DNA of 64,000 nt from Haliotis rubra (taxonomy: Eukaryota). Numbering within the stretch: the stretch's first letter is position 1; every line of letters starts with the position of its first letter. Below, one piece after another: positions 26,343 through 57,618 of the stretch. Where the stretch lies: NCBI RefSeq assembly GCF_003918875.1, contig NW_025767525.1:124001-188000 (forward strand), written 5' to 3'. Both the position numbers and the translations under genes were made by a program. The notes below the pieces were generated by a model, which worked only from the letters and a program-made list of their open reading frames with translations, was not told the origin of the DNA and ran no database searches.

Positions 26343-28770
26343 ATGCTCCGTTTTTCTGTTTTAGTGGTATTTTGGGGGGCTGCAAATGCCGGTGTATGCC
26401 TCCCCGAGTTGTGTGCCCAGGTGAAGCAAGCTCCCCTCAACTGCGCTGGCTCTGTCATCAAGGGAGGAGGATTCTGTGGTTGTACCGATGTCTGTGCCAA
26501 GGTGTATACAACGACTGTCACTCTGTCAGACTTAATTCTTCATTCATTCACTCAAACTCACTCATCCACTCACTCACACCCACCCACTCATTCACTCACT
26601 CATACACACAGCCACACACACACACATAAACACACACTAACACACCCACGCACTCACTCTCACTCACTCACTCATCCACACAGACACGCACACACATATA
26701 TACACATACTATCACACTCATCCATTCATTCACACCCACCCACCAACGCACCCACCCACCATTCACTCACTTATCCACATAGCCACGCACACACACGATA
26801 CAGCACTCATCCATTCACTCACGCCCATTCACCCACAAACAAATTCACTCACTGACTCGCTCTAACAAAACTCCACCCACCCTACCCAACTCACTCACAC
26901 GACCTTCGCCCACCCCTTCTGTCAGTTACTCGCTCTCTGAGTCACCCATCCACCCCACTCACCCCGTTACGCTCTCTCTCTACATTCAGATGGAGGGAGA
27001 TTCGTGTTATCCCACTTACAGTCACGGTGTGATGCCCGCGGAGTTGTGTGACACAGACCTCGTTTGCCGCAAGCCCCACACGTTTGGTGCGGGCACCTGT
27101 GTCAAGGACTCGCCGAAAAGTAGGTTGATGTTGGGTCTCTGTTTCATTGTACACATGGTGTAGGGTGTCTTGTCAGAACGTGAATTGAGGTCTCGCCGAA
27201 AGTGTTTGTTAAATATCTTACGACACCTGTTCAAACAACGTGTTCTGTTATTCCTGTTGATGACCCGTGAAGATCCGGGTTAGAATTGGTCTCCAGTAAC
27301 CCATGCTAGTCAAAAGAGGCGACTAACGGGATCGGGTGGTCAGGCTTGCTGACTTGATTGACACATGTAATCGTATCCCAATTGCTTAGTTCGATGCTCA
27401 TGCTGTTGATCACTGGAGTGTCTGGTCCAGTTTCGATTATTTACAGAACGCCACCATATGTAGCTGAGTGTAGCATTAAACAACAAACAGCAATATTCCT
27501 GTTGATTCCATAAAACTCTGCTCGGCTAAATCCATTCGAAAATATATTTTTCATTTATCTCAATTCAAGCAAATAGACTGACGACAAGAAAAATGTTTAG
27601 TGGAAACTGACAAATGTGGATATGGCGTGCATGGCACCAGGCAGTGTTTTTCGAATGCACAGTATCATTTAGAAAGTGGTCAAATGTAACGTGTTATATT
27701 TGGGATTACACTTTCTCAGGAAAATTCAGATTCTTGTACGTTTGTTGGGTTAAAGTCCCATGCTTGAGTCGAACCCACACGCTCAGAGACAGGCACCTAA
27801 TCGTCAATACACAAAGCCAGCAGTCTAACCCACTCAGCCAACGCGGAAACCGTGGTGAAAGTGTAATCCCATATATAACATATGTTACAGTGTTTTTCGA
27901 GTTTGACCCATGTGAAGTGTTACCTGAAAGTATCACGTGACTTTCTAGGATCCACCAAGACTAAATGTCAACAGATGATGATGGCGTCGTTGATGACCAT
28001 GATTGTTTACGACGGCAAGTGGACGCCAACCTGTGACGCCGATGGTAACTTCACACCCATGCAGTGCGACTTCTCAGGTGAGACAGCAGTTATAGTCTGA
28101 GGCGGTGTAGGTCCTCCCCAAATGGTTCAAACTGGGTTTAAGCAGTTCATCTTCTGATGGGGCGGTGGGGTAGTCTAGTGGTTAAAGCGTTGGCTCGTCA
28201 CGAATCCCCACATGGGTACAATGAGTGAAGCCCATTTCTGGTGTTCCCCGCCGTGATATTGCTGGAATATTGCTAAAAGCGGCGTAAAACCAAACTCAGT
28301 CAGTCAGTCATCTTCTGAGGATTCAAACTATATGGTGAATCTGGATACAAATTGGCATAACCTTGAATTGATAAAGTCCATCTTTATTAGCTAAAACGTG
28401 CGGAGGTACCCGATCGATTCTGAAAATACAGTCATTTATTCTAGATATTGTGTAAGAATATGCATTTGAAACAACAGTCAGTCATCGGCAGAAAAATGCA
28501 AGATGAATTTAAGTCCAGCCTCTGACTTGGTAACATGATGTCATTGCAACTTGACCAGTTCAGTCTTTAAGCATAGAAACCTGGTCTGTTGACGACTGAC
28601 CAATGAACAGATCGGCACTGAACACTATTGATATTCATAGCAGTGATCCTCCTCAACAAGACAATAACAGTTTCACACCATGTGTTGCAGGTCACTGTTT
28701 CTGTGTGGACTCCATGGGAGTTATGCATGGAAGCAAGGTCCTTGGGAAGGTCAACTGTCCCTCTCAATAA
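26343..28770 (+). CDS. Secreted IGFBP-N-like + thyroglobulin type-1 domain protein, paralogue A (165 aa)
   Basis: Exons 26343-26501, 26990-27119, 27949-28077, 28691-28770 (intron phases 0,1,1). MLRFSVLVVFWGAANA|GVCLPELCAQVKQAPLNCAGSVIKGGGFCGCTDVCAKMEGDSCYPTYSHGVMPAELCDTDLVCRKPHTFGAGTCVKDSPKRSTKTKCQQMMMASLMTMIVYDGKWTPTCDADGNFTPMQCDFSGHCFCVDSMGVMHGSKVLGKVNCPSQ*. AATAAA at 28798-28803. Confidence 0.9.
26540..26960. repeat. CA/CACT-rich microsatellite in paralogue A intron 1
   Basis: Low-complexity tract, directly visible. Confidence 0.85.
27262..27490 (+). mobile_element. SINE family 3
   Basis: gacccgtgaagatccgggttagaattggtc start plus core and tail. Confidence 0.8.
28159..28308 (+). mobile_element. 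SINE family 1
   Basis: TSD tcatcttctga. Confidence 0.85.
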
Positions 28771-29450: not shown

Positions 29451-32400
29451 ATGCTGCGGTTTGCTGTTTTAGTGGTATTTTGGGGGGCAGCGAATGCCAT
29501 TGTTTGTGTTCCTGAGTTGTGTTCCCAGGTGAAGCAAGCTCCCCTCAACTGCGCTGGTTCTATCATCAAGGGGGGAGGATTCTGTGGCTGCTCTGATGCA
29601 TGTGCCAAGGTATGTTCTGTCTTGAATATGTCCATCGGTTGACACAACGCTTTGATGAGTGTCTTACGCGAATGGTGAATTGTTCTTAAAAGCAATATTG
29701 TAAAAGCTGTTATATACTCGCCATGTAATACTGTGTGGGTCATGATATGATAGTTTTACTGACTAGTTATAGTATGACCAGAAATTATGGAGAATTTTAG
29801 GAATATGTTTAATTAGATTTCTAGTATAATCAACCGTGACCAGCTATCAAGTGCTTGGTTTCATTCAAGAGAGACAACTCCGTTAATCCCTTTTCATGAT
29901 TTTGTGAAGAGTTATCCCCCTTTGTTTACTTGCTAGCAGACGACATTTTCAGTGATCCTCAGTATGGATGATTTAGAGAAGAGGAAGTTGATTTTAGAGT
30001 ATTATAACAAGGACATCAGATCAGCTAAAGTGATTTCAAGTAGAACAGGCATCCCTTTGTCCACTGTTTATTGTGTTTTGAAAAATATTGCAAATGGATA
30101 TGGCATTGAGTACCAGGGAGGCGCAGGTAGGCCCAGAAAATTCACTGTCGGTGACAGGAGGCGGCTTGGTATTCTTGTTTCTAAAAACAAAGGAAGGAGG
30201 TTAGAATTGAAGGAGGTTGCTAATATTCACATTAATACGTGAGTAATGAGTGAACAAAATATAGAAAATTACAATCCTTAAATTCTCAATAATTTCTGGT
30301 TGTACTGTATCATTGTATTTCTTACCCGGTTATCGCAAGACTTGAATAACAATGTCAATATGTAGTTTCGCCAAATGTTTAACCTCGTGTTGAGTACAAT
30401 CGCTTATCTAGCAGAAAGTCAAGGTGCTTCTCTTAATGTCGACATAGTTTATTTTTTTATAAGTCTAGTACTGTCTTTTTCAAGATATTTCCACATAATG
30501 GTGGAACATTTCCACATTCATTCAACTCATTTTGACCTCACATATGTTAAAACTTACTCATTCAACATATATGAAGATTATAGACTCACTCACTCTACAT
30601 TCAGGTTGCGGGAGAGGTGTGCCAGGCCACGTACATGCACGGGATAATACCTCAGGGGTCTTGTGACACGGGTTTGGTTTGCAAGAAGGACCAGATGGCT
30701 ATTTTTGGTGCGGGCACCTGTGTCAAGGACACATCCAAGAGTAAGTTGCGTGTTAGGATCTCTGTTTTATTCCACACCAATATCAAGTCAACAAAACGTG
30801 ATTTCAGACCCTGCGTCCACAGCTTCTGAAAACTTTACCATTTCATAAATTGTTTGCCATGGCGAAGCCCTGTCTGAAAGGAACTATTTCTTATAATGCA
30901 AATCAAAGGATTGATAGTTTCAAGGCTCTACAGTACAAATCGTCCGTCGAGGAAGAACACTTGTCTTCCCCGAGTACATTTCGAGAGGATAGACATACGT
31001 CGGTCGGGTTCGTTGAGGTTTGTAAGCCAACAAAATTTAATGGTGATCTTTTATGTTCGTGCCTCGAAACGCTGCGTTACAGATGAGTCTAGTCAGTGCA
31101 TCTCCCATACACTGCAGCTTCACTCTCAGGAGTCAAGCTGCCAAATCCGGTCACCCATCGAAGGACTCTCCGTGAGCACCGTTGCTTTGCGATTTGTGTC
31201 CAGGCGCTATGCCTAAGGTCACTAGACACCAGAAGCCACGCTTGTCAGGGCACGTTGATGATAGATAGCTATCTATTGGTCAGTGTAATGCTGCCTTCGG
31301 TGTAAAGCACGGCTAACAGGCTTGTCAAATGTTTCTGACAGAGGAACATTTGTGAACACCATATATATGCAGTTTGTTTGAGAATGTATTTGTATGCTAA
31401 ATGTGGATACAGTTATGTGTACCTTTGAGTTCATGTTTCTATGTTTATTGTGTAACAATGTACCGGCAATATTTCAACCAATACGACTGCCCATATAAAG
31501 TATATCGGACTAACATCATGAAGTATACTCTTCAAAAACAGACACTTGACATGTGTTTTGGAGTTTACTTACTGAATGCATACAGCTGATTCAAACATGG
31601 CATCATTGCACAGTTACAGTAAAATCATCACTTGACAAATTTCCAAAACATGATTATCCAGAAAGTGTTTGGTACAACCACAGAGGGTTATTAAAGCCAA
31701 TTAGTCAGAGTAAAATGTCAGTATCTGGTATGACCACCATGAGCATCGATAACAGCTTGGCAGCGGTGACAAATAGAAGAAAGGAGAAGCCGAATGCTGT
31801 CTTGAGGAATGTTTTGATACTCTTACTGAAGTACTGTGCGCAGTTCTTGTAGTGTCTGAGGTGGCGCATGACGCTGGCGGAAGCGTCGATCAAGAGTATC
31901 CCATAGATGTTCAATGGGTGACAAATCCGGTGATCGAGAAGGCCAAGGTAATAACTGAACATTGTTTTGCTGGAGGAAGACATGTCAAATACGTGCAGAG
32001 TGAGGTCGAGCATTGCCATGCTCCAAAGATCACGTTGATGGTGAGAACGACGTGACGTTGAAGTCGTCTTCTGGCAAAAAGTCTGGCTTTCCATAGCCAG
32101 TTGCAATTGCGCACTGTCTGGTCGGAGATTCGGAGCAGGCCAGGGATTTGGATTGTTGTGGATGATGCGGCCGTGGTGTTTCAACGAAAATGTCTTAACC
32201 GGATGGGCGATCTTGGGCGGCGGTGGTAACTCCAGGTCGACCTGACCTGGGTCTGTCATTAACACTCCCAGTATTTTTGTATCGGGTCCATAGGTTTCAG
32301 CTGGTCTGTCTGGACACGCTGAAGTGCCTAGCCACATCATGCTGCGATGTCCGTCCTTGTAACGGCCGATGGCGTTGTGTCGTTGAGCTTCTATCAGCCT

Positions 32401-35164
32401 TTTCATTCTCTTGTCGTCTATAGTGGCTTAAAGCAATGCATGCGGGGTATCACTGATGTGGCTTTTTAAAGCCTACAGTCATGGGTCGGGTAAGGTGAAA
32501 TTGGGTTTTACGTCGTGCTTGAGAATATTTCGCTCATATGACGACGTGCATGCGTGTGTATGGGTATGTGCGGCTGCTTGTACTAGCCCAGACTGAAGCT
32601 GGTTTTATAGTGCTAGCCCACTGAGATACCATGCCGCAGTGAAGCATGAATACCCCACTCAGACACATTATACTGTCACCGAACCGACCAGTCCTTGTTG
32701 TACCCATTAATGCCGAGCGCCAGGCAGGGACTAACAAGTTCCATATTTTAACGTCTTTTGGTATGACGCGGCCGGGGATCGAACCCGCGACCTTCCGCTC
32801 TCTGGGCGGACGCTCTAACCACTACACCACGGAGGCGGTTCCTACAGTCATAGGCTTCAGCTCAGTGTGATACATAATTTCATGATGCTCGTGCATTTCA
32901 TGTAGGGTGCGTTTTAGAGACTCACTACAGACATGAGTGTAACTAAACGTTTTTGTTAAACGTTTCTTTTTTCAAATATTTTGTCGTCGGCAACTATTCC
33001 CCCACATGATGGGATTCAGCATGGATTGGTTTGTTTCAAATATTTTCCTAAAATTCAAATTTGTCCTATGTCAAGTTTCTTTTTTTTTAAGAGTATAAAT
33101 CCAGTGTTGTCTTGTACCGAGTCACAAATCCTGACAATCTCATTTGATCTTCCCGTACAAACAGAGGCTACGGGTGACATAGTCTAAAACGGTGTCTCAT
33201 AGTGTTCGCATAAAAACATCGAGTGTATGAGATTTAGGTATAAACCGTCGCTGTCGAGTCATCTGTACACTGTCTTCAGTAGACGTCACTGTGCCTCATG
33301 TGATATATACCACAGATATACTCTGACGTCTTATTAACGTAGATGGGCGCTGTGGGTTCGCAAAAATTTGACTTAGCCAACAATGTCCTGTTGGCCAAGG
33401 CAGTTGTATAGGTTTTGAATATAGTATTTATTGTCCCACGTTTATGAATAATTTTGTGAAATACTGTTTTTATATGATTTATCTTATTTCATCTGTACAA
33501 CACTGTATCATGAAGTATTCTTCTCCCGTCTTCTGTGACGTCAGTGTTTGTCGTGTTAGACTAGTTTTATAGTTACACGTGAAGATCCGGGTTAGAATTG
33601 GTCTTCAATGGCCCCATGCTTGTCGTAAGAGGCGACTAACGGGATCGGGTGGTCAGGCTCGCTGACTTGCTTGACACATGTCATCGTATCCCAATTGTGT
33701 AGATCGATGCACATGCTGTTGATCACTGAATTGTCTGGTCCAGAATCAATAATTTACAGACCGCTGCCATGTAAATGGAATATTGCTAAGTGCGGCGTAA
33801 AATTAAACTCGCTCACTCAGTTTTGTAGTGTTATGTGAACGGTCACGTGACTTTCTAGGATCGACGAAGACTAAATGTGAGCAGATGAGGATGGCGTCGT
33901 TGATAACCATGGTTGTTTACGCTAGCAAGTGGACGCCAACCTGTGACGCCGATGGTAACTTCACACCTCAGCAGTGCGACTTCTCAGGTGAGACAACAGA
34001 TCTAAGCCAAGATGGTATAGGTTCTCCACAAACATACCGTTCCCTGTTTTAACATGCTGTTCACCTTCTCACTGATTCTCTGACAAGTAATACTTTAATA
34101 TTCATCCAGATCCTCCGTTAATTACTAAATATGTCTCTGTTTCAATGTGGGAGAATGCTCAGACGTAATCTAAAATGAAACCACAATATTGTCTCCCAAA
34201 TGTCAATCTAATTTCTATATATACTCATGCCAATAATGGTTGTCACCACCTTCAATTTTTTAATTGGAGAGGGGGTATGGGGTATTATTATTGGGGGTGC
34301 GGAGGGAGTGACAACCATTATTGGCATGAGTATATTATTGAACGAATATGTAAGTTTAGTTTGAGTTAGGAATATGTCCACTGGTCCTCGTCTCTTTGCG
34401 ACGATTAAAGATTTTAAGTAAATAAATAAATAAATAAAATAGATAAATAAATAAATTGAGATGACCCCCCGACTCCAAACGCTTCGGGGTACAATAAATC
34501 ATGATCGTAATGTGAAGCATTTTGAGTCGGGGATCATCGGAATTTGTTTTAAAACAAAACCTTTAACCCTCGCAAAGACACGAGGGCCTGTGAATATGAC
34601 TAGTACTAGTACTGCCTATCAGTATATTGTCAGTATAGTTTAAGATTACTGAGTTAGTAAACATCCATTGGTAGAAGCACTGGTTTTGATGTATTGTGGG
34701 GCGCTTGTCCCCTTGTATAGTCGAGAAACTTTGTGGAACGTTCAGTGCCATACTACATTAGTCGTTTGCTGTTCTAGAAGATATCACATTACACTTTAAA
34801 ACATCCAAATATAGAAACCTCCACACTACTGATTGCATTAGACAGTAATATACTCCTGATAACTAATTATTGTTAAAACACAATTCAAAAACTTTAAGTG
34901 AATCTATACAGAAACAATTTCTCACAATTGTATAATTTTATAACAATATGCTATTATGATATGTACCGCCATATTACGACGATGATGACGATTACGACGA
35001 TGACGACGATGAGTTTTCGTAATGATGCAAATAAGAGTTGTCATCCTCAACAAGGTAATAACAATTTCACAACGTTTGTTGCAGGTCACTGTTTCTGTGT
35101 GGACTCAATGGGAGTTATGCAAGGAAGCAAGGTCCTTGGGAAGGTCAACTGTCCCTCTCAATAA
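29451..35164 (+). CDS. Secreted IGFBP-N-like + thyroglobulin type-1 domain protein, paralogue B (167 aa)
   Basis: Exons 29451-29609, 30605-30740, 33859-33987, 35085-35164, with the same phases and 16 Cys as A. MLRFAVLVVFWGAANAIVCVPELC...GGGFCGCSDACAKVAGEVCQATYMHGIIPQGSCDTGLVC...GTCVKDTSKRSTKTKCEQMRM...WTPTCDADGNFTPQQCDFSGHCFCVDSMG...NCPSQ*. AATAAA follows the stop. Confidence 0.9.
29770..30307 (+). mobile_element. Internally deleted Tc1/mariner element
   Basis: About 32-bp TIRs (agtatgaccagaaattatggagaattttagga / tccttaaattctcaataatttctggttgtactg), TA flanks, HTH remnant ...TGIPLSTVYCVLK...GAGRPRK. Confidence 0.8.
31526..33095 (-). mobile_element. Degenerate Tc1 transposon carrying a nested family 2 SINE
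   Basis: TIRs tactcttcaaaaacagacacttgacat / atgtcaagtttcttttttttaagagta with TA flanks. Frameshifted transposase relic at 31705-32406. Confidence 0.8.
32490..32839 (-). mobile_element. SINE family 2 nested in the Tc1
   Basis: TSD cctacagtcat. Confidence 0.85.
33575..33820 (+). mobile_element. SINE family 3 ending just upstream of B exon 3
   Basis: Near-consensus core and tail. Confidence 0.8.
34222..34332. mobile_element. Short Tc1/mariner-type MITE
   Basis: TIR tactcatgccaataatggttgtcac with TA flanks. Confidence 0.7.
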
Positions 35165-37558: not shown

Positions 37559-40500
37559 ATGCTCCAGTTTGCTGTTTTAGTGGTATTTTGGGGGGCAGCA
37601 AATGCCATTATATGTATTCCTGGGTTGTGCGCCTATGTGAAGCAAGTTCCCCTCAAGTGCACTGGTTCCATAGTCAAGGGGGGAGGATTCTGTGGGTGTG
37701 TTGACATCTGTGCCAAGGTATTTGTTCTCTGTTACATGTTGACATCTGTGCCAAGGTATTTGTTCTCTGTTACATGTCCATCTTTTCCGCAACGTTTTGA
37801 TGTGTGTATTATGCGACTGACGGATTAATCTCAACCAAACATTGTAACAGCTTTTATGTACTTGAAAAAAATATTAATACATGCCCACTTCCCTTTTTTA
37901 CTGGATTTCAAAGCTGTATAAATATTAGGGCTGCGCAATATAACCGGTTTACCGTTATTTGCCGCTTCAGACATGAAAACGGTACATATTGCGATACGCT
38001 GTTCGAAAACCGGTATTTTGACATGCATTCGGAAATCTTCGGATATTTCCTTTTTTTAAATTGTTCCTTTCCTTGTTTCATTTGTGACAAACATTATTTA
38101 CATTTATATTTTGCCATGATTAAAAGTTTTTTTAAAGCCTAATCAAGCATTGTGATTTTGTTGTGTTCTTGCTTTACAAATCAATCATTAACTCGACTAT
38201 AAGTAGGTTTTTTTGTTAAAAATAATTCTTGCAATATATTGCAATACATATCGCAATACATGCTTTCGCATCGCAATATATCGCAATACGAAAATTCCCT
38301 GCAATACCCACCCCTAATAAATATCCATACAATGATCAACCAAAATCCCAAAGACTACCACTGTTTACACAGAGACAAGTGGTAGTATTACAATGTGGAT
38401 TGTCAAACATTCAAAGGATTGGCTTGAATGTTTACAATTTTAAGTATTCTTAATGTCGACAAAATTTCTATTTTCAGAAGCCTGCTCTTGGAGTCTTTTT
38501 CAAGATGTTTCCATATCTTTCAATTTGCTAAACACTCACTCACTTCTACATTCAGGCTGAGGGAGAGGTGTGTCAGGCCCGTTACGAGAACGGTATTATA
38601 CCTGTGGGGTCATGTGACACAGGGTTGTTCTGCAAGGAGGAACACATTGGGGTTTATGGTGCGGGTACCTGTGTCAAGGACACGTTAAAGAGTAGGTTGA
38701 GCGTTGGGATCTCCGTTTTATTGTACACATGGTGTAAGGTGAAATGAAGAAATGAAGGATTTTAACGCAGAAATTGTCCCTTTAGGAGGGGAACTTTGGT
38801 GATAGTGCATGTGATTATCTGAAGTATTCATATTCTTCTCCTTTCATCTGTGACGTCAGAAATTGTTTATCAGTGTTTGTGGTTTTCTGAAGTATTCATA
38901 TTCTTCTCCTTTCATCTGTGACGTCAGAATATTGTTTATCAGTGTTTTTTTGGTTTCTGAAGTATTCATAATCTTCTCCTTTCATCTGTGACGTCAGAAT
39001 ATTGTTTATCAGTGTTTGTGGGTTTCTGAAGTATTCATATTCTTCTCCTTTCATCTGTGACGTCAGAAATTGTTTATCAGTGTTTGTGGTTTCTGAAGTA
39101 TTCATATTCTTCTCCTTTCATCTGTGACGTCAGAATATTGTTTATCAGTGTTTGTGGGTTTCTGAAGTATTCATATTCTTCTCCTTTCATCTGTGACGTC
39201 AGAATATTGTTTATCAGTGTTTGTGGGTTTCTGAAGTATTCATATTCTTCTCCACACTTGTGCGACATCGGGCGCTGCTTATCTTAAACTATCACCTGAC
39301 CTTTTAGGATCTGCGATGACCAAATGTGAGCGCATGGCCTACGTGCAGATGATGACCATGCGAAATTGGCCCAGCAAGTGGACGCCAGCCTGTGATGCCG
39401 ATGGTAACTTCACGCCATTGCAATGCAACTTCTCGGGTAAGACAACAGTGAAAGATGGTATGGTTTGTTATTAAACAGCTGTGGTCAAGCACGCAGTTCA
39501 TCCTGCCATTGTGGCATTCACGTGATAACTAACATTTTATGAGTGTTCCTGTTACATTATAAATTACTGGATTTCATCTTTTATCTGAATGAAAGTCACC
39601 ACGATTTCCGAAATATAACCGTGGGATATAAGATATATATTATCAAGATGGCTGTCATTTAAGCAACATTAACACGAGGCTTATATGTCAAAATGCATCC
39701 TAAAATACGGAAAATATCAGTGTTGACGTAACACAGACACCATTCTTGACGTAACAGACAACATTGTGGACGTAGCACAGACAACATTGTGGACGTAACA
39801 CTGACAACATTGTGGACGTAACACAGACAACATTGTGAACGTAACACAGACACCACTGTTGACGTAACACAGACACTGCTATTGACGTAACAGATAACAT
39901 TGCTGACGTAACACAGACATCATTGTGGACGTAACACAGACACCACTATTGACGTAACAGACAACATTGTGGAAGTAACACAGACAACATTGTGGACGTA
40001 ACACAGACATCATTGTGGACGTAACACAGACATCAGTGTGGACGTAACACAGACAACATTGTGGACGTTACACAGACACCACTGTTGACGTAACACAAAC
40101 ACCACTGTTCACGAAACACAAACACCATTGTGGACGTAACAACGACAACACTGCGGACGGAACACAGACAACATTGTGGACGTAACACAGACACCACTGT
40201 TGATGTAACAACAGACACCATTGTGGACGTAACACAGACACCACTGTTGACGTAACACAAACACCACTGTTCACGAAACACAAACACCATTGTGGACGTT
40301 ACACAGACACCACTGTTGACGTAACACAGACACCACTGTTGACGTAACACAGACAACATTGTGGACGTTACACAGACACCACTGTTGACGTAACACAGAC
40401 ACCACTGTTGACGTAACACAGACAACATTGTGGACGTTACACAGACACCACTGTTGACGTAACACAAACACCACTGTTCACGAAACACAAACACCATTGT

Positions 40501-41186: not shown

Positions 41187-41420
41187 CCGCGCAACCTTCG
41201 TGTACTTCACAGAAATAAACACATCTTTATTCCACACATATTCATACAAATTATATCGTTTTGAAAAAGTCAATTTACATTAAGCTGTATAAGCAGTAAT
41301 GTCGTGAACTTCAATATCTCTTCATGTGTTCCGATTTTGGTTCAAACTGAGGATGTTAGTCACAATCGTTTCCTCGATTCCATGCATCCAGCTGAATTCC
41401 GTTGTTCCGGATCCTGTTTT

Positions 41421-45059: not shown

Positions 45060-45585
45060 GATGAATGAATTGTGTTTTACGCCGCTTTTAGCAATATCCC
45101 AGCAATATCAGGGCTGGGGACAACAGAAATGGGCTCACACATTGTACCCATGTGGGGAATGGAACCCGGGTATTCGGCATGGTGAGCGAACGCTTTAACT
45201 CCTAGGCTACCTCACCGCCCCTCATGATTACAACTGGCCTTGAGCAACCAATACTTGGTGTAAGTGGCGACGAACGGGATCAGTTGGTGACTTGGTTGAT
45301 GCATGTCATCGTATCCTGATTGCGTACATCGTTGCTCATGATGTCAATCACTGGATTGTCTGGTCACATCGTTTACAGACAGCCGTCATGTATCTGGAAA
45401 TAAGGAATGCTGCGTGTTTCGTTAAACAACAAAGAGTGAGTGAGGATGTTTTGACGTGGCTTTTAGCAATATTCCAGCAATATCACGTCGGGGGACAACA
45501 GAAATTCACATACTGTACCCATGTGAGGAGAGGAACCCGGATTGGGGCGTGACGAGCGAGCGCATTAACCACTAGGCTAATACAC
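45060..45585. mobile_element. SINE cluster (family 1 -, family 3 +, family 1 -)
   Basis: Family matches; paralogous cluster at 53845-54280. Confidence 0.7.
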
Positions 45586-45754
45586 CATCCAAAACAGCAA
45601 AGGAAAAAAACTACATATAAGTACAGAGTAATCTGAATGACATGCTGTCTCTTGTTTGTTGTCGATACCGCGTTTAACGAAGATCGAGACTCTTCCCCAA
45701 CCCCCACCCCTCATTCCGATTCCACCACTAACCTATGTTGGGGCTCAGCGACCA

Positions 45755-45869
45755 GGGGCTCCTTTCATGAAGCAACCTTTACTAAGGTTAACCTTAACTC
45801 CCATTCTTTAACATTGCACTAAAGTTACCTCAGTGACTTACGACCCCCTTGCTTTGTGAAAGGAGGCCC
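45755..45869. mobile_element. Degenerate palindromic MITE
   Basis: ggggctcctttcatgaagcaa...ttgctttgtgaaaggaggccc. Confidence 0.5.
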
Positions 45870-46487
45870 AGTTTGGTGGCAATGCCTGTCGATGTAGAGT
45901 AAGTACTGAGGTATGAAGGTCATGTAATGACCAAATGAGGACTGGTTGAAACAGTGTTCGCATAGGCTTTTGAATGACAAGGCTGTGAGTGCCTCTACCA
46001 GTGCCAATAGCTTGATTCGAACTTGGGATTAGTTTCAAAAGGTTTCGCGATTTGATCGACGTCTTTCACGGGTTCACGTGGTTTGGGATCAGCTTTTATA
46101 CAGATCGTCGTCACTAAGCTTGTTCCCCATTAAGGTCCGAGTTACAACTGTTTTTCAACCCATGGTTGTTATAAGAGACGGCTAACGGAATAACGTTTTA
46201 AGGCTTACCTACTGGTTGGTGCATGTCATCGCGTCTTATTTGCTTAGATCGCTGGTCATTTTGTTAGTCACTGGATTATCTGGTCGAAAGCTTATTTACA
46301 GGTCGCCGCAATACAAATTGAACAGTGGCGTAAAAGAGCAAGCAAACAAAGAAACAAATACACATGTTGTTGTAATAATTCTGCGAAGTTAAAACAAATA
46401 TTAAAACATTGAGATGTTAACAAAGAATTGAATCAAAGTGATAAGCCGAAAGCCTATTTTCTTCCTTGCTCTGCCTGTATCTTGCTT

Positions 46488-46494
46488 TATAAAA
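46488..46494 (+). promoter_or_regulatory. TATA box of paralogue D
   Basis: TATAAAA 42 nt before the ATG; conserved in E. Confidence 0.65.
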
Positions 46495-46689
46495 GACAAG
46501 TCGGGCACATGGTCCAGTATTTTGACACGATGATCCGTCTAGCAGCGTTCCTGGCAGCCGTCGTGACGGCGGGGGCTATTGTTTGTACCCCTGACATGTG
46601 TGATGGGGTAGAGAAGACGCCCCTCACTTGCCCGGGGTCCGTCATCGAGGGAGGGGGCTTCTGTGGCTGTACAGACACCTGTGCCAAGG

Positions 46690-46852
46690 TGAGTGTGACT
46701 GAGTGAGTTTTGTTTTACGCCGCTTTTATCAATATTTCATCAATGTCACGACGGGGGACACCAGAAATAAGCATCTCATTTTGTACCCATGTGGGGAATC
46801 GAACCCGGGTCTTCGGCGTTACGAGCAAACGCTTCAACCACTGGGCTACCCA
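46690..46852 (-). mobile_element. SINE family 1 abutting the D exon 1 donor
   Basis: The reverse-strand tail begins at intron position +3; paralogous to 55030-55168. Confidence 0.8.
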
Positions 46853-46949
46853 AGTGAGGTGTGTTTAACTCGAGGTGACGTTTAGGTGTGTTTTTTATCA
46901 CGAATTCAAACCATGACACTGAATAATATTGTACTTTCGGTGGTAAAAA

Positions 46950-47165
46950 CTCAGCTCTCAGCAATATTCCAGCTATATGGGGCCATTCTGTAAATAATCG
47001 AGTCTGGACCAGACAATCCAGGGATCAACAGCTTGAGCATCGATCTACGCAACATATGAAGACATGTGTCAACCAAGTCAGTGAGCCTGAGCACCTGATC
47101 GTTAGTCGCCGCTCACGACAAGCATGGGTTGCTGAAGAACAATTCTAACCCAGATCTTCACTGGT
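46950..47165 (-). mobile_element. SINE family 3 in D intron 1
   Basis: Reverse family 3; paralogous to 55340-55740. Confidence 0.75.
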
Positions 47166-48639
47166 CACAACAGAACTTGTGCTGCTTTAATGATGAATGA
47201 ATTGTCAATAACAACAACTATTCTGATGCCACTCATGATATACATGTTTCCTGATCTAGGTAGAAGGAGACTTATGCCAGAAGTCCTCCCTGTTGACGGG
47301 GCCGCTCCCCGCACGACCAGTGTGACACGGGTCTCGTGTGCGACTCCGTCGGTAGTGCCTTCCTGGATCTGTTTGGGAAAGGCAAATGCGTGAAAGACAC
47401 ACAAAGCAAACGTTTTGTCTTTGACGGTAAGCAAAATTCAAATATGAACTTTTTTTTTTCTAGTCGTCGTATCACAAGATGCATGAGTGAGTAAGTGACT
47501 ATGGTGGTATGCCCATTTTAGCAATATTCCAGCAAATATCACTATTGGGGGGCACCGGAAATGTGCTCCACACATTGCACCCGTATAGGGGATCAGGATC
47601 CAGTTCTTTTTTAACCACTATACTGGCCCCCCTGACCCCAAATTACATGTGAAAGGTTTACGGTGTGAAAGACGTGCGTTCATGTACAGATGCACGTTGT
47701 AAGGACTGTAAGAAATATCGATTAAAATGTTTTCCAATTTCTTTATGAATTTCTAATTTTGCTAGGTTTTGGAACTCACGTTATAACTACATATACATGT
47801 ATATGACTGCGGTCCGTAAATAATCGGGATTGACTTAGCAATCCAGTGATTTCTTTTGTAATAACGGTGGTCAGTGTTAAGAGAGAGTGTTTTTTGTAAT
47901 TTGTAATTTGTAAAATCACATTGATTAAGTGATAATTATTATGGGTCGCAATGTTTAAAGTTTTGAGTGTGGGTTTTATGGTCAAATCTCGCATCATATA
48001 TGTTCAATGGCAATAGTATTTTTAGCGGCACGCCTTTTTGATAGCGCTTCAGAGTTGCCTCCCTTGGCAATCTTGTTTATTTACGGCTTTCATCATGCCG
48101 TGGAGTTTTCCACCGATTTCGACGGATTTCTATAAAGTTCTGAGTGGATAATGATACAGCCTAGCTTTGCTAGAATGCTCGAGAACTGTGAGCTATATAA
48201 AGGCTGGTTGTTGTGTTGTGACACGGACTTTTCACATGACTGGATTTATACACATCTGTCTCCCATCGTTGTTCAACATTTCAAGATTGACCCTGCTTGC
48301 CTGCTGCCATTATCATCTACCTTCAATCAGTATATCTGCTCTCACTGTAAATGTCAAGACTCTGGCGAGTTAATGTTTTAATTTTGTGACCCAATATTTT
48401 AGATTTTTGACTCAATTGCATTTACTAGATATATGTATTGTCATTCATTGTAATTTGCTCATTGTTTGCTCAATATATTATTGAATATTTTAGACTTGTT
48501 TGTGTTCTATTTTGCTGGTTCAAAGGGGACTTTTGAACCTTTTGTCACGGTAATTTATTAACCGTAACATCAGTGGATGTCAACTTCTATATTATGAGGA
48601 ACACAACGTTTTGGAGTTATATGCTTACTCCTTCATCCT

Positions 48640-49125
48640 TTTGGGTTCGATTACTTTTCTGTGCTCGACTATACCTTTGTGTTGGACTACTTTTTGTGCT
48701 CGACTATACCTTTGTGTTTGACTACTTTTTGTGCTCGACTACCTTTGTATTGGACTACTTTTCTGTGCTCGACTATACACTTCTGTTGGACTACTTTCTG
48801 TGCTCGACTATACCTTTGTGTTGGACTACTTTTCTGTGCTCGACTATACCCTACTGTTCGACTACTTTTCTGTGTTCGACTATACCTTTGTGTTGGACTA
48901 CTTTTTGTGCTCGACTATACATTGTGTTGGACTACTTTTCTGTGCTCGACTACCTTTGTGTTGGACTACTTTTCTGTGCTCGACTTCTGTTTGTGTTGGA
49001 CTACTTTTCAGTGCTCGACTTCTGTTTGTGTTGGACTACTTTTTCCTGTGCTCGACTACCTTTGTGTGGACTACTTTTTGTGTTTGACTACTTTTTTGGT
49101 GGACTACTTTTTGTGCTGGACTATT
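48640..49125. repeat. ~18/36-bp minisatellite immediately upstream of D exon 3
   Basis: Unit gtgctcgactatacctttgtgttggactacttttct. Confidence 0.9.
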
Positions 49126-49431
49126 TTTTAAACTATCACCTGACGTTTTAGGATCTGAGACCAAATGCCAGCACTTGGCGTACTCGCAGATGATGTCCAT
49201 GCAATATGGGACAACCCAGTGGCAAGCAGACTGTGATACTGATGGTAACTTCCGACCCATGCAGTGCGACATCGGGGGTAAGACAACAGTGACAGATGGT
49301 ATAGTTTGTTATCAAACAGCTGTGGCCAAGCACGCAGTTCATCCTGCCATTGTGGCCTTCACGCGATAACTAACATTTTATTATAATTCCTGTTCCATCA
49401 TCAATTACTGGATTTAATCTTTTGTCTGAAA

Positions 49432-49595
49432 TGAGTGAGTGAGTTTAGTTTTAAGCCGCTTTTAGCAATATTCCAGCAATATCACGTCGGGGGATGCCAG
49501 AAATGAGATTCACACATTGCACCCATGTAGGGATTCGAACCCGGGTCTTCGCCGTGACGAGCAAACGCTTTAATCACTAGGCTACCCAACCGCCC
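49432..49595 (-). mobile_element. SINE family 1, present in duplicate copy 2 only
   Basis: TSD ttgtctgaaat; empty site at ~39585 in copy 1. Confidence 0.85.
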
Positions 49596-49748
49596 TTGTC
49601 TGAAATAAAAGTATTTACACATGTCACCATGATTCCGAAATACATCCGTAGGATATAAGATATTTATTTTCAAGATGGTTGTAATTAAAGCAACATGAAG
49701 AAGAGGCTTACATGTCATAATGAATCTTAAAATAAGGAAAATACCAAT

Positions 49749-51391
49749 TGTGGACGTAACACAGACACCACTATTAACGTAACACAGACAACATTGTGGA
49801 CGTAACACAGACACTACTGTTCACGTAACACAGACACCATTGTGGACGTAACAAAGACAACACTGCGGACGTAACACACACATCATTGTTGACGTAACAG
49901 ACAATATTATGTACGTAACACATACAACATTGTGGACGTAACACAGACACCACTGTTAACGTAACACAGACAACATTGTGGACGTAACACAGACACCACT
50001 GTCCACGTAACACAGACAACATTGTAGACGTAACACAGACAACACTGTTGTAGGCGTAACAAAGACACCACTGCTGGCGTAACACAGACAACACTGTTGC
50101 CGTAACACAGACACCACTGAGGACGTTACACAGACGACACTGTTACCGTAACACAGACCACTGTTGACGTAACACAGACACCACTGTGACGTAACACAGA
50201 CAACACTGTTGACGTAAAACAGACACCACTGTTGACGTAACACAGACAACATTGTAGACGTAACACAGACAACATTGTGGTAGGCGTAATGAAGACACCA
50301 CTGCTGGCGTAACACAGACAACACTGTTGATGTAACACAGACACCAATGTTGACGTAACACAGACACCACTGTTGACGTAACACAGACACCACTGTTGAC
50401 GTAACACAGACACCACTTTTGACGTAACACAGACACCACTGTTGACGTAACACAGACACCACTGTTGACGTAACACAGACACCACTGTTGACGTAACACA
50501 GACACCACTGTTGACGTAACACAGACAACACTGTTGACGTAACACAGACACCACTGTTGACGTAACACAGACACCACTGTTGACGTAACAAAGACACCAC
50601 TGTTGACGTAACACAGACACCACTGTTGACGTAACACAGACACAACTGTTGACGTAAAACAGACACCACTGTTGACGTAACACAGACACCACTGTTGACG
50701 TAACACAGACACCACTGTTGACGTAACACAGACACCACTGTTGACGTAACACAGACACCACTGTTGACGTAACACAGACACCACTGTTGACGTAACACAG
50801 ACACCACTGTTGACGTAACACAGACACCACTGTTGACGTAAAACAGACACCACTGCTGGCGTAACACAGACAACACTGTTGATGTAACACAGACACCAAT
50901 GTTGACGTAACACAGACACCACTGTTGACGTAACAAAGACACCACTGTTGACGTAACACAGACACCACTTTGACGTAACACAGACACCACTGTTGACGTA
51001 AAACAGACACCACTGTTGACGTAACACAGACACCACTGTTGACGTAACACAGACACCACTGTTGACGTAACACAGACAACACTGTTGACGTAACACAGAC
51101 ACCACTGTTGACGTAACACAGACACCACTGTTGACGTAACACAGACACCACTGTTGACGTAACACAGACACCACTGTTGACGTAACACAGACACCACTGT
51201 TGACGTAACACAGACACCACTGTTGACGTAACACAGACACCACTGTTGACGTAACACAGACAACACTGTTGACGTCACACAGACACCACTGTTGACGTAA
51301 CACAGACACCACTGTTGACGTAACACAGACAACACTGTTGACGTAACACAGACACCACTGTTGACGTAACACAGACACCACTGTTGACGTA
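49749..51391. repeat. 23-bp minisatellite (~70 copies) in D intron 3
   Basis: Same unit as 39720-40623, more homogeneous. Confidence 0.95.
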
Positions 51392-52180
51392 ATATAGGGC
51401 GTAACAACACGGTTATACTTTATGTCTGGAATTAGAAATTCTTTGATACAGGCCTTTTAAACTAACATTCTAGATTGCTTTTGATTAACAAAAGTATTGA
51501 ATTGGAGTATAATATCATAATGATTTATCACTATATCATCATAAAATTCAACACACACCACATCCCGGACACAATTTCCATAGCAAAATCAGAGAAAGCA
51601 CCTGAGAAACCAATACTGTGGTGATGTACGTAGACACCGGGTGTCAAACTAACCGTGTATTGGGCACTAATGTGTTGTGCTTAAGAGATCAATTACTGAT
51701 GCAAGAAGTGTTCATTTTATTGGTAATGTGACCAGTTCTTATGTGTATGTGATGTATTTTTATGATATCTGTACTCAACAAAGAATCATCTATGAAAAAT
51801 GAAATCAGCAGCAGCAGCAGCATCATCAATGATAGTAACAATTTCACAACTTGTGTTTCAGGTCTCTGTTTCTGTGTGAACTCCACCACTGGGGACATAC
51901 AAACCGGCAAGATCCATGGCCATGTTGACTGTCCTCCAGACTAGCCGCGCAACCTTCGTGTACTTCACAGAAATAAACACATCTTTATTCCACACATATT
52001 CATACAAACTATATCGTTTTGAAAAAGTCAATTTACATTAAGCTGTATAAGCAGTAATGTCGTGAACTTCAATATCTCTTCATGTGTTCCGATTTTGGTT
52101 CGAACTGAGGATGTGTTAGTAACAATCGTTTCCTCGATTCCATGCATCCAGCTGAATTCCGTTGTTCCGGATCCTGCTTC

Positions 52181-54827: not shown

Positions 54828-54834
54828 TATAAAA
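54828..54834 (+). promoter_or_regulatory. TATA box of paralogue E
   Basis: TATAAAA 41 nt before the ATG; same context as in D. Confidence 0.65.
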
Positions 54835-54868
54835 GACAGGTCGGGCACATGGTCCAGTATTTGACACG

Positions 54869-57618
54869 ATGATCCGTCTAGCAGCGTTCCTGGCAGCCGT
54901 CGTGACGGCGGGGGCTATTGTTTGTACCCCTGACATGTGTGATGGGGTAGAGAAGACGCCCCTCACTTGCCCGGGGTCCGTCATCGAGGGAGGGGGCTTC
55001 TGTGGCTGTACAGACACCTGTGCCAAGGTGAGTGTGACTGAGTGAGTTTTGTTTTACGCCACTTTTAGCAATATTTCATCAATATCACGACGGGGGACAC
55101 CAGAAATGGGCTTCACACATTGTACCCATGTCTTCGGCGTGACAAACGAACACTTCATCCCACCGCCCCCTGTGCCAAGGTATGTTGAGTGAGTGAGTGA
55201 GGTGTGTTTAAGGCTGCTTTATTAGAAACTCAAATGATACCGAATAATATTGTATATTGTGTGGTAAAAATAACCAGATTAAACTTATTTTTTCAGTGAC
55301 GACAACGAGTTTGGGTGTTGGTTTTGTTGGTGGTGGTGGTGGTGTTGCCGTGAATAATCTTGTCTGCACCAGACAATCCAGTGATCAACGACATGAGCTT
55401 CGATCTACGCTAGTGGGATACAATGACGTGTCAACCAAGTCAGCGAGCGGATACGATGACACGTGTCAACCAAGCGGGGCGGTTAGGGTAGCCTAATGGT
55501 TAAAGCGTTCGCTCGTCACGCTGAAGACCCGGGTTCGATTCCCCACATGGGTACAATGTGTGAAGCCCATTTGTGGTGTCCCCCGCCGTGATATTGCTGG
55601 AACATTTTGCTAAAACCGGCGTAAAACTAAACTCATTCACTCAACCAAGCCAACGAGCCTGCCCACCCGATCCCTGTAGTCGCCTCTTACGAGAAGCATG
55701 GGTTACTGAAGATCAATTCTAACCCAGATCTTCACGGGTCACAACAGAACTTGTGCTGCTTTAATGATGAATGAATTGTCAATAACAACAACTATTCTGA
55801 TGCCACTCATGATATACATGTTTCCTGATCTAGGTAGAAGGAGACTTATGCCAGAAGTCCTCCCTGTTGACGGGGCCGCTCCCCCACGACCAGTGTGACA
55901 CGGGTCTCGTGTGCGACTCCGTCGGCAGTGCCTTCCTGGATTTTTTCGGTAAAGGCAAATGCGTGAAAGACACACAAAGCAAGCGTTTTCTCTTAGACGG
56001 TAAGCAAATGTCAATATACTCTTTATTGTTATCTGATGAATTAAGACAGTTAAGAGAGTACATAGCATTGTGGCCATAGTCATCGTATCAGAGGAGGCAT
56101 GACATTACATGCTTGAGTGAGTGAGTGACAATGGTTTGAGTACATAGCATTGTGGCCTTAGTCATCGTATCACAGGAGGCATGACATTACATGTTTGAGT
56201 GAGTGAGTGACAATGGTTTGAGTACATAGCATTGTGGCCATAGTCATCGTATCACAGGAGGCATGACATTACATGTTTGAGTGAGTGAGTGACAATGGTT
56301 TGAGTACATAGCATTGTGGCCTTAGTCATCGTATCACAGGAGGCATGACATTACATGTTTGAGTGAATGAGTGACAATGGTTTGAGTACATAGCATTGTG
56401 GCCTTAGTCATCGTATCACAGGAGGCATGACATTACATGTGACATTGAGTGAGTGAGTGACAATGGTTTGAGTACATAGCATTGTGGCCATAGTCATCGT
56501 ATCACAGGAGGCATGACATTACGTGCTTGAGTGACATTACGTGTTTGTGAGTGACAGTGGTTTGAGTACACCTCTTTAACACTGCGTTTGCAATGTCCAG
56601 TTTGATCGACAAACATCAAGTTTGCTGGTCTGTTACACAAACTGTTAATAAAATGCTAACATTCCCAGATATTACCGCGTGTGAGAAGATGAAGATCGCG
56701 AAGGCGTCCCAGCCGACATACTCGGACAACTGGACGCCAAAGTGTGACGCCGACGGGGCCTTCGAGCCAATGCAGTGCGACCTAGCAGGTAAGGTTGAAC
56801 GACGCCATCATTCGTTACCACTCGCCCCTTTCCGTAACTGCCAAGAAGAAGCTATTCGGCTTGTTCCGGAATAACACGAGTTGGCCACGAATGAAACGCC
56901 ATGTGACATCATTCCTGCAAATAGGTTTTTCTGTTATTCCACGACTGATCAACTTAATTGGGTAGAAAATATAAAAGGTGAAGTTGGCAAAGATGTTTTC
57001 CACTTTCTTGAAATAACGAGTCATAAAAGCCTAGTCGTCTAATAACCTACACGGAGCTTAAGCCTTTGAAGTTCATGCTAGCCCGCTAGCCCAAGACTTC
57101 TAAGTTCCGCTGACCACAAATCCTCACTGACTAGAAACATTTGAGGGCTAGAGCCAGCATTCAATGTTTTCATTTTGTTACAAACGGGAGCTGAATGGAA
57201 TTGACAGAAAATGTAAACTTTCAAGGAAGCACAGACTCTGAGAACTTAATAACTATTTAGACATGTCTTGAAAACGCCAAATTAATTTATCATTTTATGT
57301 GAGTGAGTGAGTGAGTAAGGCTTTAAGCCGCTTTTAGCAATATTCCAGCAATATCACGGCGGAGGACACCAGAAATGGGCTTCACGCATTGTACCCATGT
57401 GGGGAATCGAACCCAGGTCTTAAGCGTGATGAGCGAACGCTTTAACCATTAGAGCTTTAACCATTACCACACACTGACAAAACTCACAGGGTATACATTG
57501 GCTATTGCGACAGTAATTTGGCTTGCTTGATGTTCCAGGTCGTTGCTTCTGCGTCGATTCTGCGGGTCAGATTCAAGGTAGCAGAGTTCAAGGAAAGGTT
57601 ACCTGTCCAAGCACTTGA
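54869..57618 (+). CDS. Secreted IGFBP-N-like + thyroglobulin type-1 domain protein, paralogue E (174 aa)
   Basis: Exons 54869-55027, 55834-55999, 56669-56788, 57539-57618. MIRLAAFLAAVVTAGAIVCTPDMCDGVEKTPLTCPGSVIEGGGFCGCTDTCAKVEGDLCQKSSLLTGPLPHDQCDTGLVCDSVGSAFLDFFGKGKCVKDTQSKRFLLDDITACEKMKIAKASQPTYSDNWTPKCDADGAFEPMQCDLAGRCFCVDSAGQIQGSRVQGKVTCPST*. AATAAA at 57644-57649. Confidence 0.9.
55030..55168 (-). mobile_element. SINE family 1 inserted in the E exon 1 splice donor
   Basis: 13-bp TSD cctgtgccaaggt at 55017-55029 and 55169-55181. Confidence 0.85.
55476..55642 (+). mobile_element. SINE family 1 nested in a reverse family 3 SINE (55340-55740)
   Basis: TSD tcaaccaagc; absent from the D paralogue. 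Confidence 0.85.
56056..56570. repeat. 82-bp minisatellite (~6 copies) in E intron 2
   Basis: Unit gagtacatagcattgtggccatagtcatcgtatcacaggaggcatgacattacatgtttgagtgagtgagtgacaatggttt. Confidence 0.95.
57299..57460 (-). mobile_element. SINE family 1 in E intron 3
   Basis: Reverse family 1 body. Confidence 0.8.

What the first reader, a model, noticed from the sequence alone, without database searches (positions are those of the whole stretch)
27111..55986. Lys-Arg site conserved between the two domains in all five paralogues: a possible two-peptide precursor
Seen: the linkers read DSPKR-S (A), DTSKR-S (B), DTLKR-S (C) and DTQSKR-F (D, E). In A-C the Arg codon is split by intron 2 (A|GA). In D and E the KR lies wholly inside a longer exon 2, so it survives a change in exon boundary while neighbouring residues vary. 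Established: KR is the standard PC1/PC2-type prohormone convertase site. Inference: the precursor is cut into a free ~7-kDa IB-like peptide and a free thyropin-like peptide released in equal amounts, rather than acting as an intact two-domain IGF clamp.
Basis: partly seen in the sequence, partly recalled or inferred. Interest (0 to 1): 0.72.

Follow-up and report, generated by a model that had tools for sequence, protein, structure and literature searches.

The report
Conserved Lys-Arg hinge in abalone mini-IGFBPs
A tandem family of small secreted abalone proteins, built like miniature IGF-binding proteins, keeps a Lys-Arg pair in the short hinge between its two domains; the pair is conserved well beyond abalone and looks like a protease cutting site, but nothing yet shows that it is cut.

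Summary
The window is Haliotis rubra. It holds five tandem 4-exon genes for about 16-kDa secreted proteins: an IGFBP-N-like (IB) domain, a 12-16-residue hinge and a thyroglobulin type-1 (TY) domain.

KR sits in every hinge. In A-C the Arg codon is split A|GA by phase-1 intron 2. In D and E it is CGT inside a longer exon 2.

Corrections:
- D carries an extra G at 47311 that breaks its frame before the KR.
- D and E exon 2 are 95% identical, so they count as one witness.
- The IB product would be 8.1-8.8 kDa, not about 7 kDa.

All nine Haliotis proteins from four species keep KR. Gigantopelta, Littorina, Pinctada, Mya, Mytilus, a chiton, heterobranchs and a bryozoan keep a basic pair. Scallops, Mactra, Mercenaria and unionids keep only a single Arg. 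The site stays within 0-5 codons of intron 2, on either side, and also precedes each extra TY repeat in multi-TY relatives. AlphaFold models make the hinge flexible.

Strict dibasic enrichment is modest (P about 0.03). There is no furin consensus and no RNA or peptide evidence. Cleavage is plausible (about 0.4) but unproven. The proteins are not perlustrin.

The parts
26343..28770 (+). Paralogue A, 165 aa. Exons 26343-26501, 26990-27119, 27949-28077, 28691-28770.
   Evidence: Identical to database protein P0002 (Haliotis rubra).
27116..27119 (+). A: Lys codon AAA plus the first base of Arg. The Arg codon is completed by GA at 27949-27950, across phase-1 intron 2.
29451..35164 (+). Paralogue B, 167 aa. 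Exons 29451-29609, 30605-30740, 33859-33987, 35085-35164.
   Evidence: GT-AG introns, open frame, 79% identical to A.
30737..30740 (+). B: Lys AAG plus the first base of Arg, completed by GA at 33859-33860.
37559..41186 (+). Paralogue C, 168 aa from the ATG at 37559. Exons 37559-37717, 38556-38691, 39308-39436, 41104-41186.
   Evidence: P0001 ends with this sequence; its model starts at an upstream in-frame ATG.
38688..38691 (+). C: Lys AAG plus the first base of Arg, completed by GA at 39308-39309.
46530..51944 (+). Paralogue D. Exons 46530-46688, 47260-47426, 49152-49277, 51862-51944. The frame is broken by an extra G at 47311.
   Evidence: The intact orthologue in H. asinina is P0022.
47408..47413 (+). 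D: AAA CGT (Lys-Arg) inside exon 2, downstream of the frameshift.
54869..57618 (+). Paralogue E, 174 aa. Exons 54869-55027, 55834-55999, 56669-56788, 57539-57618.
   Evidence: Identical to P0025.
55981..55986 (+). E: AAG CGT (Lys-Arg) inside exon 2. The donor lies 13 bases further on, phase 1.
39284..47444 (+). First copy of a segmental duplication. The second copy is 49128-56018. Both ends lie in or near intron 2 of neighbouring genes. It joined D/E-type IB exons to C-type TY exons to make D.
   Evidence: colinear self-matches of 84-95% identity.

Best explanation
The genes encode secreted miniature IGFBP-type proteins. Each has a signal peptide, a 10-cysteine IB-like domain, a 12-16-residue flexible hinge and a 6-cysteine thyroglobulin type-1 domain.

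The Lys-Arg in the hinge is a conserved linear motif. Its most likely role is a proteolytic processing site. In this reading a kexin/subtilisin-type proprotein convertase cuts after Arg, and a carboxypeptidase trims the two basic residues. That would free an IB-like peptide of 8.1-8.8 kDa and a thyropin-like TY peptide of 7.4-7.7 kDa, with no disulfide holding them together.

Shown here: gene structure, domain identity, conservation of the site, hinge flexibility in the models, and modular exchange of the two halves.
Inferred: signal-peptide cleavage after A-N-A or A-G-A, the disulfide pattern, the cut itself, the enzyme, and whether the cut is complete or partial.
For: 1. KR is kept in all nine Haliotis proteins of four species (H. 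rubra, H. cracherodii, H. asinina, H. rufescens), while flanking hinge residues vary: SPKRS, TSKRS, TLKRS, KTKRS, QSKRF, QRKRF, KSKRF. Codons vary too: AAA/AAG for Lys; A|GA, CGT and CGG for Arg.

2. A basic pair is present in distant relatives: Gigantopelta RKR|A, Littorina KR|E, Pinctada KR|E, Mya KR|E, Mytilus RR|A, chiton RR|V, heterobranchs RR/RK/KK, bryozoan RR|A.

3. The 4-exon structure with intron phases 0/1/1 is shared from chiton to bryozoan. The basic site stays within 0-5 codons of intron 2 but lies before it (bryozoan, scallop), inside it (Haliotis A-C, Gigantopelta) or after it (Pinctada, chiton, Aplysia). Splice-site sequence therefore does not explain it.

4. In relatives with several TY domains, each further TY repeat is also preceded by a basic site 5-12 residues before its first Cys, for example oyster AKR|D and ARR|D and Mytilus KKR|Q.

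5. Most single-Arg variants have a second basic residue at P4, P6 or P8 (read). That fits the known rule for monobasic convertase sites (own knowledge).

6. In the AlphaFold models the hinge block has one of the lowest pLDDT values outside the signal peptide (71 in A, 63 in E; only the IB loop at residues 61-70 is lower, at 60 and 59), against 90 or more in the TY core. pTM is only 0.45-0.47, so the domains are not predicted to pack.

7. The D-type gene joins the IB half of one lineage to the TY half of another and is intact in H. asinina. The halves tolerate exchange.

8. From own knowledge: KR|F is cleaved many times in molluscan FMRFamide precursors. In proinsulin the KR|GIVEQC junction is cut six residues before a cysteine, the same spacing as KR|STKTKC here.
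Against: - There is no direct evidence of cleavage. No RNA run holds the genes, so tissue and co-expression with PC1/3 or PC2 are unknown.
- No peptide of the family was found in the supplements of the H. laevigata shell proteome. Some of those files were cut when stored.
- Enrichment of strict [KR]R over a shuffled hinge is only P = 0.03 with one sequence per clade, because hinges are rich in K and R.
- Scallops, Mactra, Mercenaria and unionids have only a single Arg.
- None of the Haliotis sites has Arg at P4, so furin-type cutting in ordinary secretory cells is not expected (own knowledge of the R-X-K/R-R rule).
- The best fold match over both domains is intact human IGFBP3. In vertebrate IGFBPs both domains together give high-affinity binding (own knowledge).
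Confidence: 0.4

Rival explanations
1. The intact two-domain protein is the working form, a compact IGFBP-like clamp for insulin-related peptides. Under this reading the basic hinge residues serve binding to ligand, matrix or glycosaminoglycan. At most they act as an extracellular protease-sensitive release switch, as the linkers of vertebrate IGFBPs do. They are not a biosynthetic processing site.
For: - Foldseek's best match aligns both domains to human IGFBP3 in the IGF1/IGFBP3/ALS complex (E 2.5e-5). The N half also matches the IGFBP4 N-domain and SIBD-1, and the C half matches IGFBP C-domains.
- Hinges are generally K/R-rich, 3-6 basic residues out of 12-16.
- There is no furin consensus.
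- The dibasic form is not universal.
- Own knowledge: N and C domains of IGFBPs cooperate in binding, and linker proteolysis is their known regulatory step.
Against: - E-type hinges are not generally basic (3 of 16 residues, with two or three acidic ones) yet keep KR.
- The distance from the Arg to the first TY cysteine varies from 5 to 12 residues. That argues against a fixed structural contact.
- The same motif recurs before extra TY repeats that have no IB partner next to them.
- The models predict no domain-domain packing (pTM 0.45-0.47).
Confidence: 0.35
2. The KR has no function of its own. It persists through shared ancestry, recent duplication and gene conversion within the array, helped by a hinge composition that makes basic pairs likely.
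For: - A and B are 79% identical. D and E exon 2 are 95% identical and lie in a segmental duplication.
- Shuffling the hinge gives a [KR]R by chance in 13-34% of trials for the H. rubra hinges, and in up to 85% for others.
- Several clades lack the pair.
Against: - The pair survives between lineages that are only 39-50% identical overall and have different exon boundaries and Arg codon families.
- Neighbouring hinge residues and hinge length vary freely.
- An Arg is present in every hinge examined.
Confidence: 0.15

Closest known systems
Vertebrate IGFBP1-6 (IB domain, linker, thyroglobulin type-1 domain)
   Same: Same two-domain order. The TY domain is above the Pfam cutoff. The fold matches IGFBP3 over both domains and the IGFBP4 N-domain. 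Linker proteolysis is a known regulatory step in IGFBPs (own knowledge).
   Different: The hinge is 12-16 residues instead of roughly 60-100. The IB domain has 10 cysteines and a GFCGC motif instead of 12 cysteines and GCGCC. The Pfam IGFBP score is below the curated cutoff in the abalone proteins (20-24 bits against 28). Ligand binding is untested.
Free single-IB proteins: perlustrin (abalone nacre), SIBD-1 (spider), neuroparsins (arthropods, molluscs)
   Same: An IB-like peptide of about 80 residues acting on its own is an established kind of molecule (PMC6003135, PMC8398477). The modelled N half matches the SIBD-1 structure 3zxc.
   Different: These proteins are encoded as stand-alone IB proteins, as far as the papers read here say. 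Perlustrin's own peptides (for example CQFDLWCLR) are absent from this window, so perlustrin is not a product of these genes.
Multi-domain precursors cut at dibasic linkers: proinsulin, FMRFamide precursors, pacifastin-type and LEKTI-type inhibitor precursors
   Same: A KR pair sits in a short exposed linker between disulfide-locked modules. A basic site also precedes every repeated module in multi-TY relatives.
   Different: Processing is documented for those precursors (own knowledge) and not for this family. No amidation signal or spacer peptide is present here.
Thyropins (p41 invariant-chain fragment, equistatin, saxiphilin TY domains)
   Same: The TY half matches the p41 fragment bound to cathepsin L (1icf; target TM-score 0.72, 35% identity) and saxiphilin TY domains.
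   Different: Protease inhibition is untested. No known thyropin is fused to an IB domain.

Membership tests
IGFBP superfamily, IGFBP1-6-type architecture | N-terminal IB domain recognised by Pfam PF00219 at the curated cutoff | tested here: not met
   Scores are 20.4-24.2 bits against a cutoff of 28 for P0001-P0003. Single exons give no hit. Orthologues in Pinctada, Liolophura, Littorina and others do carry a precomputed PF00219 hit.
IGFBP superfamily, IGFBP1-6-type architecture | IB-like fold of the N half | tested here: met
   Foldseek matches to IGFBP3 (7wrq_B, E 2.5e-5, both domains), SIBD-1 (3zxc, target TM-score 0.63), IGFBP4 N-domain (2dsp_B, 0.53) and HtrA1 N-domain.
IGFBP superfamily, IGFBP1-6-type architecture | C-terminal thyroglobulin type-1 domain | tested here: met
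   PF00086 scores 33-41 bits against a cutoff of 20.6. Exon 3 alone scores 22-27 bits. The PDB profile search hits thyroglobulin, saxiphilin, p41 and the IGFBP2-6 C-domains.
IGFBP superfamily, IGFBP1-6-type architecture | Twelve N-domain cysteines with a GCGCC motif | tested here: not met
   Ten cysteines before the hinge and the motif GGGFCGC(T/S/V)D.
IGFBP superfamily, IGFBP1-6-type architecture | Binds IGF or insulin-like peptides | not testable with these tools
   Needs a binding assay.
Convertase-processed (PC1/3, PC2) secretory precursor | Signal peptide, and a KR or RR site in an exposed region | tested here: met
   Hydrophobic N-terminal helix at residues 2-15 followed by A-N-A or A-G-A. 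KR lies in a hinge with block pLDDT of 71 and 63.
Convertase-processed (PC1/3, PC2) secretory precursor | Site conserved in orthologues | tested here: inconclusive
   Kept in all Haliotis proteins and many distant relatives. Reduced to a single Arg in scallops, Mactra, Mercenaria and unionids. Enrichment P = 0.03.
Convertase-processed (PC1/3, PC2) secretory precursor | Expression in cells with regulated secretion and PC1/3 or PC2 | not testable with these tools
   No RNA run holds the stretch. The four runs offered were genomic contigs.
Convertase-processed (PC1/3, PC2) secretory precursor | Processed products detected | tested here: inconclusive
   No family peptide appears in the H. laevigata shell proteome supplements, some of which were cut when stored. 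No other proteome was available.
Furin substrates | R-X-(K/R)-R consensus | tested here: not met
   The Haliotis sites read SPKR, TSKR, TLKR, QSKR, KTKR, QRKR and KSKR, none with Arg at P4. Only the oyster site (RKTR) and the Ylistrum site (REPR) fit the minimal R-X-X-R.
Perlustrin | Sequence identity with perlustrin P82595 | tested here: not met
   Perlustrin peptides printed in the PMC6003135 supplements (CQFDLWCLRRKGNK...) have no match in the six-frame translation of the window.
Thyropins | Inhibits papain-like cysteine proteases | not testable with these tools
   Only the fold match to the p41 fragment in complex with cathepsin L is available.

The most novel reading that the evidence does not exclude
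The family is an ancient lophotrochozoan bifunctional precursor. A convertase cut at the hinge would release, in equal amounts, a neuroparsin/perlustrin-like IB peptide (a hormone or growth-factor binder) and a free thyropin-type protease inhibitor. In multi-TY relatives it would release a string of such inhibitors. The IGFBP-like domain order would then be a packaging device rather than a clamp.
Probability: 0.3. Interest if true: 0.7.

Novelty: new variant of a known kind. Interest (0 to 1): 0.45.

Why it matters
The IB-plus-TY domain order is usually treated as the hallmark of chordate IGFBP1-6. Here it occurs, with a shared 4-exon structure, in gastropods, bivalves, a chiton and a bryozoan. 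No paper in the library searched describes this family.

If the conserved hinge site is cut, the family would link three things studied separately: free IB peptides (perlustrin, neuroparsin, SIBD), thyropin inhibitors, and regulation of IGFBPs by linker proteolysis. It would also give abalone growth and shell biology a defined pair of peptides to look for.

If it is not cut, these are simply the shortest-hinged IGFBP-like proteins known, and candidates for binders of molluscan insulin-related peptides.

Tried and rejected
- Pfam on single exons finds the TY domain but not the IB domain, which is split by intron 1.
- Perlustrin as a product of these genes is rejected. Its peptides are different and absent from the window. 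The perlustrin-like shell protein in PMC6003135 has an IB domain plus a disordered tail, not a TY domain.
- The scallop PyIGFBP (PMC3929647) is a 125-residue, 3-exon protein with CRCC and CQNV motifs. It is not this family.
- RNA evidence could not be obtained. The look-up of sequencing runs gave no run on record as RNA. The runs holding about 0.2 of the words proved to be genomic contigs of a related organism that cover the introns. They gave no splice, strand or tissue information.
- A shell-proteome supplement search with six short family words found no family peptide.
- Literature searches for the family or for processing of thyropin-type precursors found nothing relevant.
- The large HMM search of protein representatives was not run. 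The operators flagged it as costly, and the word search had already given 44 relatives.
Exons were searched by reference, and full-length searches used database proteins P0001, P0002 and P0025, which equal models C, A and E.
- Models B and D were never searched as joined proteins. They were only translated and aligned locally.
- Model coordinates are not exposed, so contacts of the hinge Arg could not be inspected.


Full report
**Source and gene models**

An exon-1 reading frame of paralogue C, searched by reference, matched a Haliotis rubra protein at 100% identity. The window is therefore blacklip abalone.

Motif scans and inspection of splice sites give five tandem genes on the + strand. 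Each has four exons with GT-AG introns of phase 0, 1 and 1:
- A: 26343-28770
- B: 29451-35164
- C: 37559-41186
- D: 46530-51944
- E: 54869-57618

Models A, C and E equal database proteins P0002, P0001 (which starts at an upstream ATG) and P0025.

Exons were searched by reference, and full-length searches used those database proteins. B and D were only translated and aligned locally.

**The observation**

- A: CVKDSPK-R-STKTKC
- B: CVKDTSK-R-STKTKC
- C: CVKDTLK-R-SAMTKC
- E: CVKDTQSKRFLLD-DITAC
- D: the same KR inside a longer exon 2

In A-C the Arg codon is A|GA across intron 2. In D and E it is CGT, and the phase-1 donor lies 13 bases further on.

Three corrections apply:
1. D has one extra G at 47311 compared with E and with the H. 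asinina orthologue. Its frame stops before the KR in this assembly.
2. D and E exons 1-2 lie in a segmental duplication, 39284-47444 against 49128-56018. They are about 95% identical in exon 2, so they are one witness.
3. The predicted IB product is 79-86 residues and 8.1-8.8 kDa. The TY product is 68-70 residues and 7.4-7.7 kDa.

**What the proteins are**

- The TY domain is above the Pfam cutoff. A profile search hits thyroglobulin, saxiphilin, the p41 fragment and the IGFBP2-6 C-domains.
- The IB domain scores below the Pfam cutoff in abalone (20-24 bits against 28). Several orthologues do carry the Pfam IGFBP hit.
- AlphaFold models are confident, with mean pLDDT of 82 and 83.
- Foldseek's best hit aligns both halves to human IGFBP3. 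The N half also matches SIBD-1 and the IGFBP4 N-domain. The C half matches p41 bound to cathepsin L.

These are miniature IGFBP-type proteins with 10 + 6 cysteines and a 12-16-residue hinge. They are not perlustrin, whose peptides are different and absent from the window. No paper describing the family was found.

**Conservation of the site**

The word search gave 44 relatives, from gastropods, bivalves, a chiton and a bryozoan.

- All nine Haliotis proteins (H. rubra, H. cracherodii, H. asinina, H. rufescens) keep KR, while the flanking residues change.
- Basic pairs occur in Gigantopelta (RKR), Littorina, Pinctada and Mya (KR), Mytilus, Liolophura and Watersipora (RR), and heterobranchs (RR/RK/KK).
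- Scallops, Mactra, Mercenaria and unionids have only a single Arg. Most of these have another basic residue at P4, P6 or P8.
- Strict [KR]R is present in 18 of 31 hinges against 10.5 expected when each hinge is shuffled. With one sequence per clade it is 9 of 15 against 5.4, P = 0.03. The enrichment is real but modest, because hinges are rich in K and R.

**Gene structure as an independent line**

Mapping eight orthologous proteins onto their loci shows the same exon plan everywhere. The basic site always lies within 0-5 codons of intron 2, but its position relative to the intron varies:
- Inside the intron-split codon: Haliotis A-C (A|GA) and Gigantopelta (C|GA).
- Just before the intron: Pinctada, chiton and Aplysia.
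- Just after the intron: the bryozoan, the scallop and the second oyster site.

The residue pair therefore does not depend on splice-site bases, and it uses both Arg codon families.

In relatives with two to five TY domains, each further TY repeat is also preceded by a basic site.

**Accessibility and modularity**

In both models the hinge block has one of the lowest pLDDT values outside the signal peptide (71 and 63); only the IB loop at residues 61-70 is lower (60 and 59). pTM is 0.45-0.47, so no packing of the two domains is predicted.

Each half has an even number of cysteines, so a cut would separate them.

The duplication with both ends in intron 2 made D from a D/E-type IB half and a C-type TY half. 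That D-type gene is intact in H. asinina (P0022). This shows the halves can be exchanged.

**What is missing**

- No RNA run holds the genes. The runs offered turned out to be genomic contigs of a related organism, so tissue and splice evidence could not be added.
- A search of the H. laevigata shell proteome supplements for six family words found nothing.
- The sites lack Arg at P4, so furin-type cutting in ordinary secretory cells is not expected.
- In vertebrate IGFBPs the two domains bind ligand together, and linker cutting is a regulated extracellular event (own knowledge).

**Verdict**

My estimates are:
- About 0.4 that the hinge is a convertase-type processing site yielding two free modules.
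- About 0.35 that the intact protein is the working form, with the basic hinge used for binding or as an extracellular release switch.
- About 0.15 that the pair has no function of its own.

Mass spectrometry of abalone tissues and a KR>AA mutant would settle it.

Noticed in passing
window 47311: Paralogue D has one extra G in exon 2 (CTCCCCGCACGAC against CTCCCCCACGAC in E, and the same length as E in H. asinina). This gives a stop a few codons later. It is either a young pseudogene or an assembly error.
   Followed up: partly
window 39284-47444 and 49128-56018: A segmental duplication with both ends in or near intron 2 of neighbouring genes created the chimeric D gene (D/E-type IB exons plus C-type TY exons). 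The same D-type gene is intact in H. asinina (P0022, 176 aa), so the event predates the split of the two species.
   Followed up: yes
L004 10001-12577 and 16000-20460; window D and E exons 1-2: In H. asinina the D-type and E-type genes have identical exon-2 proteins. In H. rubra D and E exon 2 are about 95% identical, yet the two species differ from each other. This suggests gene conversion of the 5' halves within each species.
   Followed up: partly
window 37496-37560: Three tandem copies of a ~22-base unit, each containing an in-frame ATG, lie just upstream of C's signal peptide. The database model P0001 starts at the first one and is 16 residues longer than the model from 37559.
   Followed up: no
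window 38818-39253, 39721-40623, 41423-43715, 48640-49124, 49749-51392, 56056-56534: Large minisatellites lie in and between the genes. A 23-base unit occurs x40 in intron 3 of C and x72 in intron 3 of D. A 51-base unit occurs x45 downstream of C. Units of 69, 35 and 82 bases lie in intron 2 of C, D and E. They produce long spurious ORFs on both strands.
   Followed up: no
window 5648-7732, with N runs 7733-7862 and 8232-8361: A degenerate CACT-rich array with 19- and 23-base units shows extreme GC skew (-0.83) and abuts two 130-base N gaps. The gaps were left as they are.
   Followed up: no
window 45062-45220, 46692-46851, 49429-49595, 52563-52725, 53847-54008, 58446-58611; also 27088-28466: Copies of a ~160-base dispersed repeat occur in introns and spacers. 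Very high summed contig depth and tRNA-like loose ends (GGTTCGATTCCCC) in the laid contigs point to a SINE-type element in intron 2 of A.
   Followed up: no
window 29952-30242, 31705-32406 (-), 35697-36194: ORFs that look like transposase fragments lie in the long introns of B and between B and C. They were not checked against family libraries.
   Followed up: no
P0011, P0012, P0014-P0018, P0006, P0013: Bivalve and some gastropod relatives carry one IB domain followed by two to five TY domains. In Argopecten each extra TY is a two-exon module with phase-1 borders. In Saccostrea the second half of TY1 and the first half of TY2 share one exon.
   Followed up: partly
P0031-P0034, P0036, P0037, P0039 (Aplysia and other heterobranchs): This subgroup has an extra pair of cysteines just after the dibasic site (for example SKK-SVPHCNTACRRKSLQC). 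Automated annotation labels some members 'cystine knot toxin'.
   Followed up: no
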